Of a stretch of 64,000 bases of DNA, positions 5,020-60,182 are shown piece by piece. The position numbers were made by a program, and so were the translations under genes. Positions within the stretch are counted from its first letter, which is position 1, and every line of letters starts with the position of its first letter. This stretch comes from Octopus sinensis (Eukaryota): assembly GCF_006345805.1 (NCBI RefSeq), contig NC_043011.1:23882464-23946463 (forward strand), read 5' to 3'. Below the pieces are notes generated by a model. It ran no database searches and had not been told where the DNA came from. It saw only the letters and a program-made list of their open reading frames with translations.

Positions 5020-5572
5020 GCCCTGATGCAGTACCAGGCAGTGGCTCTCATGGCTTCTGATCTTAACTGATTGGAAGTGTTATCATGTACATTGTTTTGT
5101 CTTGGTATAAAAGATGGGCTACAGCAAATATTCTGCTCAATACCACAGATTTGCTTGTCAGTTGTTTGACCTTAACCAGTTGAGCATGTCCCTTAGTGGC
5201 TGACGATATGTGCATCTCTGATCACGAGCAGAAGTAGTGTGGGAGCATCATAGCCATGTTTGAGAGGGATGCTTTGGGGTTTGAATAGTTCACCTCTGGA
5301 AACATGGGTGGTTCTTTCAACATCCTTAAACAACCCTTATTCGGGGACCGTTTGAGCGGGATGGGCTACTCAACCTGAAGAAAATTCAAACTGGGCCCCA
5401 CCTGCAAGGTCATGTGCTGTTTATCTTGATATGAGATCACCATGTCGCGCACATATGGTTGTGATGCATGTGCCTGGTGTACCTTTATCAGACGGGTAGT
5501 CATGATGGGTATATTGGGCTTCGTATATTTTACCCCAGTGTCACTTTGATGGCATGAACTGCTCTCTCACTC
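5013..5572 (+). mobile_element. 560-bp (AAT)n-flanked non-coding retro-element, copy 1
   Basis: Starts AATAAATGCCCTGATGCAGTACC and ends GCTCTCTCACTC(AAT)n. Near-identical copies at 5898-6357 and 6930-7479. Confidence 0.75.
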
Positions 5573-5897: not shown

Positions 5898-6357
5898 ATG
5901 GGCTACAGCATATATTCTGCTCAATAACACAGATTTGCTTGTCAGTTGTTTGACCTTAACCAGTTGAGCATGTCCCTTAGTGGCTGGTGATATGTGCATC
6001 TCTGATCACGAGCAGAAGTAGTGGGGGAGCATCATAGCCATGTGTTGAGAGGGATGCTTTGGGGTTTGAATAATTCACCTCTGGAAACATGGGTGTTTCG
6101 TTCAACATCCTTAAACAACCCTTATTCAGACCTTTCGAGTGGGATGGGTTACTCGACCTGAAGAAAATTCTAACTGGGCCCCACCTGCAAGGTCATGTGC
6201 TGTTTATCTTGATATGAGAGATCATCATGTCGCGCACATATGGTTGTGATGCATGTGCCTGGTGTACCCTTATCAGACGGGTAGTCATGATGGGTATACT
6301 GGGCTTCGTATATTTTACTCCAGTGTCACTTTGATGGCATGCACTGCTCCCTCACTC
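5898..6357 (+). mobile_element. (AAT)n-flanked element, copy 2 (5'-truncated)
   Basis: Starts internally at ATGGGCTACAGC and has the same 3' end and (AAT)n tail. 5' truncation with an intact 3' end is typical of TPRT. Confidence 0.75.
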
Positions 6358-9369: not shown

Positions 9370-9605
9370 CTATGAATTCTCGGCAGCATTATAGGTTCTG
9401 TAAGTTGGGTTTCCTGGCTGGAATATTGGTTGTTCTTCATCAGCTGTGTCAGCGGTGACGTTGTTATGCACAGACGTGGAACTCACTTGTCTTGCTTGGG
9501 GACGGAGTTTACGTGTGCGTGCCAATTCGATGATGATTGCCAGCAAAAGCAGTAAAAGACCAGCTTCGACAATAACAATTATCCAAACTGGACTGAGCGA
9601 AGTTT
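9370..9605 (-). CDS. TYR: Tyrosinase-family gene, terminal coding exon 5 (TM helix and cytosolic tail)
   Basis: Acceptor T13-gcag|AA ACT is phase 1, matching exon 4. Encodes (K)TSLSPVWIIVIVEAGLLLLLLAIIIELARTRKLR...DEEQPIFQPGNPTYRTYNAAENS-stop: a hydrophobic helix, a basic stop-transfer patch and a dileucine-like motif. Total CDS is 1608 nt = 535 aa + stop. Confidence 0.88.
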
Positions 9606-17451: not shown

Positions 17452-17596
17452 TCGGTATATCTGCTTCAACCAAATCGTCATAGTCGTAGCCAAGAGCGTG
17501 TGAGTGAGCAAACATCATGAAGTTCTTTTCTACTGGAAAGAACGGCACCATGTTGGCCATTCTACCGTGACCCGGCGGGGCTTCAAATACTGGCAG
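17452..17596 (-). CDS. TYR: Tyrosinase-family gene, coding exon 4
   Basis: Acceptor cttctttgacag|CTG, donor CCG A|gtaagt, phase 1. The 145 nt encode LPVFEAPPGHGRMANMVPFFPVEKNFMMFAHSHALGYDYDDLVEADIP, matching the TYR-family APIGHN..MVPF.P...LGYDY block. Confidence 0.93.
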
Positions 17597-20000: not shown

Positions 20001-20135
20001 CTCTGAGAAAGCTGGTTGGTTTTCTCTGATCCAAATTTCCAGAGTTTTATCTATGAATGCATGATGAAGCTGGAAAACAGGGTCGAATGCAGCTGTAACC
20101 AATTCCGAAAATGTTCCATTCATGAAAGCATGGAC
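20001..20135 (-). CDS. TYR: Tyrosinase-family gene, coding exon 3 (CuB site)
   Basis: Not in the ORF track in this frame. Acceptor cttttctcag|GTC CAT, donor GAG|gtaagt. The 135 nt encode VHAFMNGTFSELVTAAFDPVFQLHHAFIDKTLEIWIRENQPAFSE, completing HNQ-VH and supplying the DPxFxLHH CuB motif. Confidence 0.95.
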
Positions 20136-37115: not shown

Positions 37116-38077
37116 CTGATTATGAGTGTACATTCTACCGGTGGTTGGTCCATCTCTATTCGCAAACCCTTCCAAAAGGTTTCTGAAGCTGTTATTACCA
37201 CTGCGTGTGTCGTACGGTAAAGTGTCATAGTTTTTAACGGACTTCAAGAACTCTACATCCTTCAAAGGAGGAAGTGAGCGATATTCAGGGTTGTTGCCTG
37301 GGCGTCGAATAATCTTCCCACTCGGTGTTGACACGTCGCAGCCTGCACAGCCGCCCAAACTCGGTACGCAATATACAGAGAACTCCGAAAACACAGACAA
37401 AGAATCAAGTGATCCGTTGTTGTTATCAGGTGTATGGCCCATAAAATCGTTGGTGCACACATCACAATTTCTACCTGATTCAGTCCAGTTCCAATAGGGG
37501 AAAGAAAACGTTGGATTCTTCAGGGCTCTTGCTATTTCCATTTCCCAAAGTAGGAGATATGCTCGGTGCCACGAACCGAACCCCGGTCCTCCGTGAGCAA
37601 AATCGGGCACGTAGGCTGCCGTTTGACATTTTTCTATAGGCTGCATAAGTGTCCTCCTAGCCACATAGTAATGGAAATAAGCTAAATAGTTGTACACCGA
37701 TACATTTACAAATGTTGGGTTTACTGCAGGATCCACTGAAGCAGTGGTGTCCAAAACTGCATAATCACTCTCTGTCTCACTCAGCAGTAAAATACCACGA
37801 AGAAGCTCGTCTTTCTCTTCTTTAGTTAATTTCCTGTAATCTTTGCGAATGCGACGAAGTTTTTTGGTGCAATTAGATCCTGTAAATCCATAATCACAGT
37901 GCTGACACATATAACCATCATAGTTACCACGACAGTCACAAGCTTGCTTAAAGAAACGTGTGGGCCAGTTAAAACGATCGTCCATCTTGTTTTCAGGTGG
38001 GACCAGATCAACCTCGTTGTTAAAATCTATTGGCCGGCACAATCCCCGTAATGGACCGCCACATGGAAGTGTATCAC
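37116..38077 (-). CDS. TYR: Tyrosinase-family gene, coding exon 2 (EGF-like domain, CuA, first CuB His)
   Basis: Acceptor ctaatttcag|GT GAT, phase 1 giving G-D-T-L-P-C-G. Encodes DDRFNWPTRFF..CDCRGNYDGYMCQHCDYGFTGSNC, CuA YFHYYV and DFAHGGPGFGSWHRAYLLLWE, then NCDVCTNDFMG, SFRNLLEGF and HNQ. Donor CAG|gttggt, phase 0. Length 962 nt = 2+960. Confidence 0.95.
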
Positions 38078-58075: not shown

Positions 58076-58205
58076 CTGGCCTTGTTGGACAACAAATTCC
58101 ATCAGGAGTGGTGGCATTTTTCGCACATACTCTTGGAAACTGTGCAGAAATTGAGGGCAATAATGTGAAGAAAAGAAAACATGAAAATGTTTGAGGAATA
58201 TCCAT
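58076..58205 (-). CDS. TYR: Tyrosinase-family gene, coding exon 1 (signal peptide and start of Cys-rich domain)
   Basis: Reads MDIPQTFSCFLFFTLLPSISA|QFPRVCAKNATTPDGICCPTRP+G. The hydrophobic leader is followed by AQFPRxC...CCP, as in vertebrate TYRP1/DCT N-termini. Donor CCAG|gtaaaa, phase 1. An in-frame upstream ATG at 58223 is an alternative start. TYR is a family-level symbol; orthology to TYR vs TYRP1/DCT is not established. Confidence 0.9.
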
Positions 58206-58401
58206 AGCCAAATAGCGATGCATATTCGTAAATATATTTAAATATATTTTTTTTTGCCTAAGTTGAAAATGTAAAAAAAAAAGAAAAAACAAAAAAATTT
58301 GTTTTTGCAAGTTTCTATGTATTTTCACTCCCCTGCGTTGGTTACTGTTAGCAAGCCATTAAGATCCTCCAGAGTTCCGTAACGTACAACTGTTTTACTG
58401 T

Positions 58402-58432
58402 GAATGAACGGACCACATGCACCATATATTAA
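58402..58432 (-). promoter_or_regulatory. Putative core promoter: TATA-like TTAATATAT, E-box CATGTG, Inr-like TCATTC
   Basis: Gene strand reads TTAATATATGGTGCATGTGGTCCGTTCATTC. The TATA-like element is about 25 nt before a TCAKTY Inr match (A at 58405), with CATGTG (58414-58419) between them. Confidence 0.35.
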
Positions 58433-58486
58433 GTCGACGCTGGGTTAATGGCGACTGGATTACCTGCTAATAATTACTCACGTGAC

Positions 58487-58496
58487 CCACCTCTGT
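58487..58496 (-). promoter_or_regulatory. CLEAR-like MiT/TFE site (GTCACGTGAG)
   Basis: 9/10 match to the CLEAR consensus GTCACGTGAC, lying between the M-box and the putative core promoter. Confidence 0.5.
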
Positions 58497-58590
58497 AATA
58501 CATTGTTTTTCACCTATTTGCTTGTTTTTTTTTTATATATTTAACCCTCGCTTTTTTTTTTTCAGCATGTCCTCGTGACTGATGTACGTA

Positions 58591-58601
58591 AGCACATGAC
58601 G
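58591..58601 (-). promoter_or_regulatory. M-box-like MITF site (CGTCATGTGCT)
   Basis: Plus-strand agcacatgacg reads CGTCATGTGCT on the gene strand, a 10/11 match to the vertebrate M-box AGTCATGTGCT, about 390 bp upstream of the ATG. Confidence 0.6.
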
Positions 58602-60182
58602 AATTCCGAAGCTTTTAAAACGGCTACGTGACATAGGAGACGAATCAGACTCCACCTCCACTTTATCTCAAGACGTATTCATCTAAAACACACATACACA
58701 TAGACGCACGCACACACACATACACACACATACACACACAGGCATGCACGTACACACGCACACACATACACACACTCACACTCCGCCCTCTCTTCCCGCT
58801 CTCTCTCTCTCACACATACACACACATATGCACACACATTTGCGCACATGGTCACACTCTTACAATGGCTCAACAAACAAATATAATATCACAAATTGAA
58901 GTAATTCACTATTTGAATGTTTAAAGAAATTATATTTTTGTTCTCTTTCCCTCTTTGTCTCTCTTTCTCTCTCTCCCCCATCCTCTGTCTCTTTTTCTCA
59001 CTCTCACTCTCTCTCTGTCTCTGTATATGCGTGTTTGTATGTTTTTTTACGCAGGTATGTATGTATGTATGTATGTATGTATGTATGTATGTATGTACAT
59101 AATATGAATATGTATGTTTAATTGTGTTTATGCTACTAAATGGGATTATGGTCATATAGAAAGTTCATTCATATACTTTTTTCCCTTTTTGAATCAATAT
59201 TGTGGTTACGTCAATCTGGGAATTTATGTACGTTTGTACCTGTGTTTGTATGTTACGCAAGCGTATTATGGTGCAAATTAAAACCCCGGGAATACAGACA
59301 CAGAAGTCTCTCACGTCACCCACATGTAGGGTGAAATGTCGATTAACTGAGATTATCTATGCAATTAGTAAACAAAAACTTCCTATCCAAAATTTAAAAA
59401 TCAACAAACTAGTGAGATAACTCCAATATTATGTTTATCGGAATTATTTAGCAATATAGGCAATATAGACTAGAGTGGGTTTGCTCTTTAAAGCTTACGG
59501 TCGAACGCATGGGTACATTTCGGTCTTATTAGACCTTCGAGCTGGCAGAAACTTTAAGCACGACGGGCGCAATGCTTAGCAGTATTTTGTCTGTCATTAC
59601 GTTCTGAGTTCAAATTCCGCCGAGGTCAACTTTACCTTTCATCCTTTCGGGGTCGATAAATTAAGTACCAGTTTCGTACTGGAGTCGATCTAATCGACTG
59701 GCCCCCTCCCCAACAATTTCGGGCCTTGTGCCTAGAATAGAAAAGATTAGACCTTCTAAGCGAAGCATATTTAACACACGACTGGCAAGACTAAGCGCGA
59801 TCAATACACACACACACACACATACATACACATACATACACATAAATACATACATATATATATATATGTATATATACATACACATAAATACATACATACA
59901 TACATACATACATACATACATACATACATACATGCATACATACATATATATATATATATATACTCTTTTATTCTTTTACTTGTTTCAGTCATTTGACTGC
60001 GGCCATACTGGAGCACCGCCTTTAGTCGAACAAATCCACGCCAGAACTCATTCTTTGTAAGCCTAGTACTTATTCTATCGGTCACTTTCGCCAAACTGCT
60101 AAGTTACGAGGGCGTAAATACGCCAGCATCGGTTATCAAGCGATGGTGGGGGAACAAAAACATACATGCACACTCACACATA

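What the first reader, a model, noticed from the sequence alone, without database searches (positions are those of the whole stretch)
58400..58635. Vertebrate-style MITF control module upstream of the tyrosinase: M-box + CLEAR + Inr E-box
Seen within about 200 bp on the gene strand: CGTCATGTGCT (58591-58601), AGTCACGAG (58572-58580), GTCACGTGAG (58487-58496), and CATGTG (58414-58419) between a TATA-like and an Inr-like element. This lies in non-repetitive sequence. Established: vertebrate TYR/TYRP1/DCT promoters are driven by MITF through the M-box AGTCATGTGCT, TYR has a second CATGTG at the initiator, and MiT/TFE factors bind CLEAR GTCACGTGAC. My rough estimate at about 35% GC is that the 10-mer GTCATGTGCT would occur by chance in a 500-bp window (both strands) with p of about 1e-3 or less. 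Inference: together with the sorting motif, this points to a MITF > membrane tyrosinase > lysosome-related pigment organelle circuit shared between a mollusc and vertebrates, by deep homology or convergence.
Basis: partly seen in the sequence, partly recalled or inferred. Interest (0 to 1): 0.82.

Follow-up and report, generated by a model that had tools for sequence, protein, structure and literature searches.

The report
Conserved M-box promoter of octopus tyrosinase
Just upstream of an octopus gene for a vertebrate-type, membrane-anchored tyrosinase lies a short control region carrying the exact 10-base "M-box" of vertebrate pigment genes plus a palindromic E-box. Both are conserved from octopuses to squid or cuttlefish, so they are almost certainly functional, and are probably bound by the pigment-cell factor MITF, though binding was not tested.

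Summary
The motifs are real. Three sit at the stated coordinates. The CLEAR-like GTCACGTGAG is at 58486-58477, 10 nt from the stated position.

The gene downstream is on the minus strand, with its ATG at 58223 and 5 coding exons. It is Octopus sinensis tyrosinase-like: 541 aa, with a signal peptide, a Cys-rich region, CuA/CuB sites and a TM helix, aligning end to end with human TYRP1.

Comparison with O. bimaculoides, Argonauta hians and mRNA contigs of two decapods shows three conserved elements:
- the M-box GTCATGTGCT/C;
- a non-E-box TCACGAGG, 19-20 nt downstream of it;
- the E-box TCACGTGAG.

They lie in the only collinear conserved block of the 5.8-kb 5' flank. The octopus-decapod local alignment gives z = 9.

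The CATGTG "Inr E-box" fails. It lacks the T/A flanks MITF prefers and is absent in Argonauta and the decapods.

The 5' ends of those mRNAs fall within the module, so the start site is near but unmapped. A better TATA (TATATAAA, 58539-58532) sits between the M-box and the E-box.

MITF control is the best reading (about 0.55) but is untested. MITF>tyr regulation is already published for bivalves and abalone. Deep homology versus convergence stays open.

The parts
58387..58660 (-). Conserved proximal regulatory module. It is the only collinear conserved non-coding block in the 5.8-kb 5' flank.
   Evidence: blastn of Octopus against Argonauta aligns 58738-58560 and 58541-58387; the other hits are non-collinear repeats. 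The module is single-copy in the window and in L001. Local alignment z = 37.7 against Argonauta and 9.0 against the decapod.
58591..58601 (-). M-box CGTCATGTGCT: a T-flanked CATGTG, 10/10 to the vertebrate M-box GTCATGTGCT.
   Evidence: It is identical in O. bimaculoides (L001:9626-9634), GTCATGTGCC in Argonauta (L002:9366-9375) and GTCATGTGCTT in decapod A (L004:40-50). It is the longest word shared by the octopus and decapod sequences.
58571..58580 (-). AGTCACGAGG: a conserved non-E-box element (one TCAC half-site; CACGAG fits the N-box form CACNAG) at fixed spacing from the M-box.
   Evidence: It starts 20 nt after the G of the M-box in Octopus and Argonauta and 19 nt after it in decapod A (AATCACGAGG). 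The spacer sequence is not conserved.
58532..58539 (-). TATATAAA, a full TATA-box consensus and an alternative core-promoter candidate. It lies about 60 bp (centre to centre) downstream of the M-box and 54 bp upstream of the E-box.
   Evidence: Read. A/T-rich TATA-like runs occupy the same relative place in O. bimaculoides, Argonauta and decapod A (GATAAATAG, L004:97-105). This is an inference; it was not mapped.
58477..58486 (-). Palindromic E-box GTCACGTGAG (core TCACGTGA), 9/10 to CLEAR GTCACGTGAC.
   Evidence: It is the only TCACGTGA in the 64 kb. TCACGTGAG is present in L001, L002 and all ten decapod A mRNA contigs.
58457..58462 (-). TAATCC, a K50-homeodomain (OTX/PITX-type) consensus.
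   Evidence: Inside the octopod-conserved block; TAATCT in Argonauta. The assignment is by consensus only.
58419..58432 (-).
   Evidence: 14/14 identical in Argonauta. In decapods the likely counterpart is TTAATAGAGGTGC or TTAAGAGAGGTAC, and it lies within the mRNA contigs.
58414..58419 (-). Not supported as a conserved MITF site.
   Evidence: Its flanks are G and G (GCATGTGG). It is replaced by CTTCTTG in Argonauta and absent in decapods. CATGTG occurs 39 times in the window.
58076..58223 (-). Coding exon 1 of the tyrosinase gene (ATG at 58223; signal peptide and start of the Cys-rich region).
37116..38077 (-). Coding exon 2 (Cys-rich/EGF-like region and CuA site).
20001..20135 (-). Coding exon 3 (CuB site).
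17452..17596 (-). Coding exon 4.
9370..9605 (-). Coding exon 5 (TM helix, cytoplasmic tail with EEQPIF and NPTY, stop codon).

Best explanation
The region 58387-58660 is the proximal promoter and regulatory module of the Octopus sinensis gamma-subclass (signal peptide + Cys-rich + TM, vertebrate-type) tyrosinase gene.

Its conserved core is a T-flanked CATGTG M-box (GTCATGTGCT), a TCACGAGG element two helical turns downstream, an A/T-rich TATA-type stretch, and a palindromic T/A-flanked E-box (TCACGTGA). In decapods that E-box coincides with where most mRNA 5' ends fall.

The most likely mechanism is that a bHLH-leucine-zipper dimer of the MiT/TFE family (the octopus Mitf orthologue) binds the M-box and the E-box and activates transcription in melanin-making cells. 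The TCACGAGG and TAAT-type sites would bind co-factors.

Shown: the motifs, their conservation, their position at the 5' end of the transcription unit, and the nature of the gene.

Inferred: which protein binds, the activating direction, and the cell type.
For: - Motifs verified.
- Chance rates are low for the 10-mer and for TCACGTGA.
- M-box, TCACGAGG and E-box are kept in order, and the first two in spacing, in O. bimaculoides, Argonauta and decapod A, while the spacers diverge.
- The best octopus-decapod local alignment is exactly the M-box block: score 25 against 11.3 +/- 1.5 in shuffles, maximum 19 of 500.
- This is the only collinear conserved element in the 5' flank.
- Both sites satisfy the MITF flank rule, and CATGTG cores are typical of differentiation genes (PMC6672050).
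- The 10-mer equals the vertebrate M-box of Tyr, Trp1 and Trp2 (PMC2148160).
- The core stays CATGTG in every lineage at one site and CACGTG at the other, as expected for a factor that accepts both.
- The 5' ends of the ten longest decapod A contigs and of decapod B fall inside the module, and the 5'UTR is collinear with octopod genomic DNA, so there is no distant upstream exon.
- The gene is a TYR/TYRP1-type enzyme.
- Mollusc Mitf activates tyr promoters in a pearl oyster and an abalone (PMC8173187; PMC13544226).
Against: - There are no binding, reporter or expression data for any cephalopod.
- The presence of Mitf in octopus was not checked here.
- E-boxes are shared by many bHLH-ZIP factors. 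GGTCACGTGAG is also close to a USF-type site (own knowledge).
- TCACGAGG, as conserved as the M-box, is not a known MITF site.
- The TSS is unmapped. In a decapod, two mRNA contigs include the M-box and all ten include the E-box, so part of the module is transcribed.
- Only four independent lineages were compared, and two of them are represented only by mRNA contigs.
Confidence: 0.55

Rival explanations
1. The module is a real promoter element, but its E-box-type sites are used mainly by other factors. Ubiquitous bHLH-ZIP proteins (USF, the Max/Mlx network, SREBP) would bind TCACGTGA, and a HES/HEY-type repressor or an unknown factor would bind CACGAG. Mitf would play little or no part.
For: CACGTG is recognised by many bHLH-ZIP proteins (PMC6672050). 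GGGTCACGTGAG resembles the USF optimum (own knowledge). TCACGAGG is conserved as strongly as the M-box yet is not CANNTG, and it fits the N-box form CACNAG (own knowledge). Ascidian tyr promoters work without canonical Mitf sites (PMC3334994).
Against: The T-flanked CATGTG core is invariant in four lineages. It is a poor site for USF and Myc/Max but a classic one for MiT factors, and it matches the vertebrate M-box in 10/10 bases. Mitf does drive tyr in other molluscs.
Confidence: 0.25
2. The conserved blocks act in the mRNA rather than on DNA. They would be part of a 5'UTR regulatory feature: an 11-codon upstream ORF that starts at the ATG inside the M-box, and/or a stem between the M-box flank and the E-box.
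For: Decapod A mRNA contigs include the E-box (10 of 10) and the M-box (2 of 10). The uORF from the M-box ATG is 11 codons plus a stop in all four lineages. Decapod A has a perfect 12-nt inverted repeat, TGCTTCTCACGT/ACGTGAGAAGCA.
Against: The uORF frame differs between octopods and the decapod across the conserved TCACGAGG, so the peptide is not conserved. The inverted repeat is not conserved in octopods. RNA folding is no better than shuffles: z = +0.12 for octopus and -1.65 for the decapod. Rfam gives only sub-threshold hits in the CA microsatellite. The conserved words are palindromic or near-palindromic DNA-binding consensus sequences. Most contig 5' ends lie downstream of the M-box.
Confidence: 0.07
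3. The motifs are chance matches picked out because the reader knew what to look for.
For: CATGTG occurs 39 times in the window. The 'Inr E-box' copy is unflanked and unconserved. A shared 11-mer of any sequence arises in 3.7% of shuffles. GTCATGTGCT also occurs twice in a repeat.
Against: Three elements are collinear and conserved in four lineages while the surrounding sequence diverges. The local alignment gives z = 9 against the decapod. The sole TCACGTGA in 64 kb sits here.
Confidence: 0.03

Closest known systems
Mouse and human tyrosinase proximal promoter (M-box + TATA + initiator E-box, MITF-driven)
   Same: It has the same 10-bp M-box GTCATGTGCT, 11/11 including the next T of the mouse probe AGTCATGTGCTTT (PMC2148160). 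The motif sits on the sense strand upstream of a TYR-type gene. A second bHLH-ZIP site lies further downstream near the transcript 5' ends, with a TATA consensus between the two. Mouse has its M-box 70 bp upstream of the TATA and an E-box just downstream of it (PMC2120943); octopus has about 60 bp from M-box to TATATAAA.
   Different: The conserved downstream site is CACGTG, not CATGTG, and lies about 54 bp (octopus) or 26 bp (decapod) after the TATA-like run rather than between TATA and Inr. An extra conserved TCACGAGG has no described vertebrate counterpart. The TSS and MITF binding are unknown.
CLEAR elements of lysosomal and autophagy genes (TFEB/TFE3/MITF; GTCACGTGAC)
   Same: The core TCACGTGA is identical, the whole element matches 9/10 in octopods, and it lies promoter-proximally.
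   Different: There is a single copy, the last base is G, and the decapod version is 8/10 (ATCACGTGAG). The gene is a pigment enzyme rather than a lysosomal hydrolase. By the nomenclature of PMC6672050 it should simply be called an E-box.
Mollusc Mitf-tyrosinase regulation (Pteria penguin Tyr; Haliotis iris tyr-1 and tyr-2)
   Same: Same phylum. Mitf activates tyr promoters in luciferase assays, with added yeast one-hybrid and RNAi evidence in abalone (PMC8173187; PMC13544226).
   Different: In Pteria the E-boxes are plain CATGTG at -1.6 to -1.8 kb, and single deletions had no effect. Up to 2013, molluscs were known to have only secreted alpha-subclass tyrosinases (PMC3658974); whether those two genes belong to that subclass was not checked here. 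The gene here is gamma-subclass, and its sites are proximal, full-length and footprinted.
Ascidian tyr and tyrp promoters
   Same: They are invertebrate gamma-type tyrosinase-family genes expressed in Mitf-positive pigment cells.
   Different: No canonical Mitf sites were found there (PMC3334994), whereas the cephalopod promoter has two.

Membership tests
M-box-type (MITF-target) tyrosinase-family promoter | The 10-bp M-box GTCATGTGCT, with a 5'T-flanked CATGTG core, upstream of a tyrosinase-family gene | tested here: met
   58600-58591 matches 10/10 on the gene strand, 377 bp upstream of the ATG. Definition taken from PMC2148160 and PMC6672050.
M-box-type (MITF-target) tyrosinase-family promoter | The motif is conserved among orthologous promoters | tested here: met
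   O. bimaculoides 10/10, Argonauta 9/10, decapod A 10/10; alignment z = 9.
M-box-type (MITF-target) tyrosinase-family promoter | The M-box lies within about 100 bp upstream of the TATA box and TSS | tested here: inconclusive
The TSS is not mapped. Six of the ten listed decapod contig 5' ends (and the decapod B contig start) lie 55-90 nt downstream of the M-box, but two contigs include it.
M-box-type (MITF-target) tyrosinase-family promoter | A second CATGTG E-box between the TATA box and the initiator | tested here: not met
   The CATGTG at 58419-58414 has G/G flanks. It is absent in Argonauta (CTTCTTG) and in decapods, and the neighbouring TATA-like element is transcribed in decapods. A conserved CACGTG takes the downstream position instead.
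M-box-type (MITF-target) tyrosinase-family promoter | Bound and activated by MITF | not testable with these tools
   This needs EMSA or DAP-seq, reporter assays, or ChIP or CUT&RUN.
CLEAR element (TFEB/TFE3/MITF) | The 10-bp palindrome GTCACGTGAC | tested here: inconclusive
   GTCACGTGAG matches 9/10 in octopods and ATCACGTGAG 8/10 in decapod A. The core TCACGTGA is invariant.
CLEAR element (TFEB/TFE3/MITF) | Belongs to a lysosomal or autophagy gene, often with several copies near the TSS | tested here: not met
   There is one copy in 64 kb, and the gene is a tyrosinase.
Gamma-subclass (membrane-bound) type-3 copper protein, for the gene under control | Signal peptide, Cys-rich region, CuA and CuB sites, and a C-terminal TM helix | tested here: met
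   The 541-aa model has a hydrophobic N-terminus, matches PF00264 (E = 7.8e-36), aligns with human TYRP1 over residues 28-455 (E = 6e-76), and has the TM stretch VWIIVIVEAGLLLLLLAIII. Definition from PMC3658974.

The most novel reading that the evidence does not exclude
The arrangement of M-box, TATA and downstream E-box is not convergent. It would be a site-level inheritance from the promoter of the gamma-tyrosinase gene in the last common ancestor of protostomes and deuterostomes, kept in cephalopods and vertebrates and lost or scrambled in ascidians and in molluscs without this gene. The whole circuit of Mitf, membrane tyrosinase and pigment organelle would then be an ancestral bilaterian cell-type module.
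Probability: 0.1. Interest if true: 0.8.

Novelty: new member of a known kind. Interest (0 to 1): 0.52.

Why it matters
If octopus Mitf binds these sites, cephalopods would give the clearest invertebrate case of a canonical M-box driving a vertebrate-type membrane tyrosinase. Ascidians lack such sites, and the bivalve case tested so far used distal plain E-boxes. The old question of whether melanin-cell regulation is ancestral or convergent would then become testable at the level of single binding sites, in animals where CRISPR already works (squid). The footprint also defines a compact promoter of about 270 bp that could serve as a pigment-cell or ink-gland driver for cephalopod transgenesis. 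In addition, the work records that coleoids carry a gamma-subclass tyrosinase, which a 2013 survey did not find in molluscs.

Tried and rejected
O. sinensis, O. vulgaris and O. bimaculoides proteins are on record only on genome contigs, so no octopus 5' end could be obtained.
2. Two protein searches with exon-1 peptides, meant to find decapod genomic exon 1 and its promoter, found only fish-like and other non-cephalopod tyrosinase-family fragments or nothing.
3. The decapod genomic contig L003 holds exons 2-4 but no exon 1 within 10 kb upstream.
4. A metagenome-wide scan for M-box + N8-11 + ARTCACGAGG gave three identical hits in a 55% GC marine organism with no tyrosinase. These are chance matches.
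5. An RNA-structure reading was rejected. Fold z-scores are unremarkable, Rfam hits lie only in the CA repeat and below threshold, and the decapod 12-nt inverted repeat is not conserved.
6. A transposable-element origin was rejected: the module is single-copy.
7. The excess of GTCATGTGCT in the window (3 against 0.18 expected) is a repeat artefact, not enrichment.
8. I looked for proximal M-boxes upstream of two hemichordate and one amphioxus tyrosinase-like genes. There were 4 TCATGTG in 9 kb against about 1.4 expected. Each gene has one at -490 to -590, and one of these is GGTCATGTGAC. This is too weak to call.
Full report
**Observation**

Read on the minus strand, the window contains CGTCATGTGCT (58601-58591), AGTCACGAG (58580-58572) and CATGTG (58419-58414) exactly as stated. 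GTCACGTGAG is present, but at 58486-58477 rather than the stated 58487-58496, a 10-nt slip. Local GC is 0.36.

Shuffles of the window give these chance rates:
- TCACGTGA: 0.79 copies expected, and the only copy in the whole window is this one.
- TCATGTG is not enriched in the window overall: 10 found against 13.6 expected.
- CATGTG occurs 39 times, so the "Inr" copy carries no weight on its own.

The two other GTCATGTGCT sites (5409, 6192) lie in two copies of a dispersed repeat.

**The gene**

Downstream on the minus strand is a five-exon gene: 58223-58076, 38077-37116, 20135-20001, 17596-17452 and 9605-9370. All junctions are GT/AG.
- The 541-aa product is identical to Octopus sinensis "tyrosinase-like" XP_029645898.2, differs at one residue from the O. 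vulgaris protein, and is 94.6% identical to the O. bimaculoides protein.
- It has a hydrophobic N-terminus, a Cys-rich region, a Pfam Tyrosinase domain (E = 7.8e-36) and a C-terminal TM helix.
- It aligns with the human TYRP1 luminal domain over residues 28-455 (E = 6e-76).

This is the gamma-subclass architecture of Aguilera et al. 2013. That survey found only alpha-subclass tyrosinases in the molluscs then available (PMC3658974). Outside cephalopods, the best hits in the word-limited search were hemichordate and amphioxus tyrosinases at 34-36% identity.

**Comparative evidence**

I fetched the orthologous loci of O. bimaculoides (L001) and Argonauta hians (L002). I also fetched Logan mRNA contigs of two decapods: decapod A (L004-L011, L016, L017; the same protein appears in 93 sample blocks) and decapod B (L012).

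O. bimaculoides is about 95% identical across the module, so it says little.

Argonauta and decapod A are informative:
- O. sinensis: CGTCATGTGCT-TACGTACATC-AGTCACGAGG
- Argonauta: CGTCATGTGCC-TACCTCACTC-AGTCACGAGG
- Decapod A: TGTCATGTGCT-TCTCACGTC-AATCACGAGG

The two words are kept and the spacer is free. The spacing is 20, 20 and 19 nt.

Further downstream, TCACGTGAG is kept in all lineages: GGGTCACGTGAGT, GGGTCACGTGAGG and CCATCACGTGAGA.

Three further results point the same way:
- The longest word shared by 1.2 kb of octopus upstream sequence and the decapod 5' region is GTCATGTGCTT.
- The best local alignment is the M-box block, scoring 25 against 11.3 +/- 1.5 in 500 dinucleotide shuffles (maximum 19), z = 9. 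Against Argonauta, z = 37.7.
- In 5.8 kb of 5' flank, the only collinear Octopus-Argonauta matches are 58738-58560 and 58541-58387.

The module is single-copy. Chance is therefore excluded for these three elements.

**What is not conserved**

It has neither the 5'T nor the 3'A that MITF prefers (PMC6672050). In Argonauta it is CTTCTTG, and it has no decapod counterpart.

The TATA-like TTAATATATGGTGC is 14/14 identical in Argonauta. Its likely decapod counterparts are TTAATAGAGGTGC and TTAAGAGAGGTAC. These are not TATA boxes, and they lie inside every decapod mRNA contig.

AGTCACGAG is not an E-box, although it is clearly functional. CACGAG fits the N-box form CACNAG used by HES-type factors. 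That is my own recollection and was not tested.

**Transcription start**

No octopus transcript could be retrieved.

The decapod A 5'UTR is collinear with octopod genomic DNA from about 39 nt upstream of the M-box onward. So there is no distant 5' exon, and the start is in or next to the module.

In L004 coordinates, the ten longest contigs begin at 1, 26, 53, 77, 105, 110, 111, 116, 122 and 134. Decapod B begins at the equivalent of 136. The M-box is at 40-49 and the E-box at 124-132.

Only the longest 10 of 93 contigs are visible, and the ends thicken at 105-136. I read this as a main start near the E-box plus rarer upstream starts, but that reading is an inference.

A full TATA consensus, TATATAAA, lies at 58539-58532, about 60 bp after the M-box and 54 bp before the E-box. 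A/T-rich TATA-like runs occupy the same relative place in the other three lineages.

With that box, the layout would be M-box, TATA, then an E-box near the start.

**Mechanism**

The best-supported reading is a proximal promoter whose M-box and E-box are bound by a MiT/TFE bHLH-ZIP dimer.
- Both sites meet the flank rule.
- The 10-mer equals the vertebrate M-box of Tyr, Trp1 and Trp2 (PMC2148160).
- One site is fixed as CATGTG and the other as CACGTG, as suits a factor that accepts both cores.
- Mitf activates tyr promoters in a pearl oyster (PMC8173187) and in an abalone, where yeast one-hybrid and RNAi evidence add support (PMC13544226).

Against this reading:
- Nothing here shows binding.
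- I did not verify Mitf in octopus.
- USF and Max-type factors share CACGTG.
- The unexplained TCACGAGG is as conserved as the M-box.

An RNA-level reading is unlikely:
- Fold z-scores are +0.12 and -1.65.
- There is no Rfam match beyond the CA repeat.
- The 12-nt inverted repeat in decapod A is not conserved.
- The uORF from the M-box ATG has a curiously constant length of 11 codons, but its frame differs across lineages.

**Comparison and novelty**

The module works like a vertebrate M-box promoter and meets the sequence and conservation criteria. The position criterion is open, and MITF dependence is untestable here.

The idea of a mollusc Mitf>tyr axis is already published, including a claim that it is ancestral (PMC13544226). 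New here are:
- a full-length, footprinted M-box plus E-box;
- their conservation across octopods and decapods, a split I recall as roughly 270 Myr old;
- their location in front of a gamma-subclass tyrosinase.

By contrast, ascidian tyr/tyrp promoters lack canonical sites (PMC3334994).

Deep homology versus convergence cannot be decided. Three hemichordate and amphioxus relatives each have one TCATGTG at -490 to -590, but 4 sites in 9 kb against about 1.4 expected is weak.

**Verdict**

This is a real, conserved cis-regulatory module with MiT-type sites.

- Interest: 0.52.
- Novelty: new member of a known kind.

Noticed in passing
window 58597-58562 (-); L002:9369; L004:43: The ATG inside the M-box opens an upstream ORF of exactly 11 codons plus a stop in O. 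sinensis (MCLRTSVTRTC), O. bimaculoides, Argonauta (MCLPHSVTRLG) and decapod A (MCFSRQSRGLQ). This holds even though the decapod frame is shifted by 1 nt across TCACGAGG.
   Followed up: partly
window 58359-58348 (-); L002:9691: A three-codon uORF, ATG GCT TGC TAA, lies in an octopod-conserved stretch; Argonauta has ATG GCC TTT TAA. It is absent in decapods.
   Followed up: no
L004:46-57 and 126-137: Decapod A has a perfect 12-nt inverted repeat, TGCTTCTCACGT/ACGTGAGAAGCA, linking the 3' flank of the M-box to the E-box. Octopods lack it.
   Followed up: partly
window 58532-58539 (-): A full TATA consensus, TATATAAA, lies between the M-box and the E-box.
   Followed up: partly
window 58457-58462 (-): A TAATCC (OTX/PITX-type homeodomain) consensus lies in the conserved block; Argonauta has TAATCT. 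OTX2 co-regulates human TYR in the retinal pigment epithelium according to the title and abstract of PMC3258524.
   Followed up: no
window 9370-9605 (-), protein residues about 510-541: The cytoplasmic tail motif [DE]EEQPIF.PG[ND]P[ST]Y.TYNAAE is conserved in all five cephalopod proteins. It resembles an acidic di-leucine signal (I-F in place of L-L) followed by an NPxY-like motif.
   Followed up: no
window 9370-58223 (-): Coleoid cephalopods carry a gamma-subclass (vertebrate-type, membrane-bound) tyrosinase. Its nearest non-cephalopod hits were hemichordate and amphioxus proteins. A 2013 survey listed molluscs as having the alpha subclass only.
   Followed up: partly
window about 5370-5460 and 6150-6240 (+): Two copies of a dispersed repeat lie about 783 bp apart. 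Each carries GTCATGTGCT, which inflates the window count of that 10-mer.
   Followed up: partly
window 58690-59110: Microsatellites lie directly upstream of the module: (CA)n, CT-rich runs and (TATG)n. The same kind of repeats flank the Argonauta and O. bimaculoides modules. Sub-threshold Rfam mir-297 hits here are repeat artefacts.
   Followed up: yes
L018, L019, L020 (upstream 3 kb): Each hemichordate or amphioxus tyrosinase-like gene has one TCATGTG 490-590 bp upstream of its ATG. The one in L019 is GGTCATGTGAC, flanked on both sides.
   Followed up: partly
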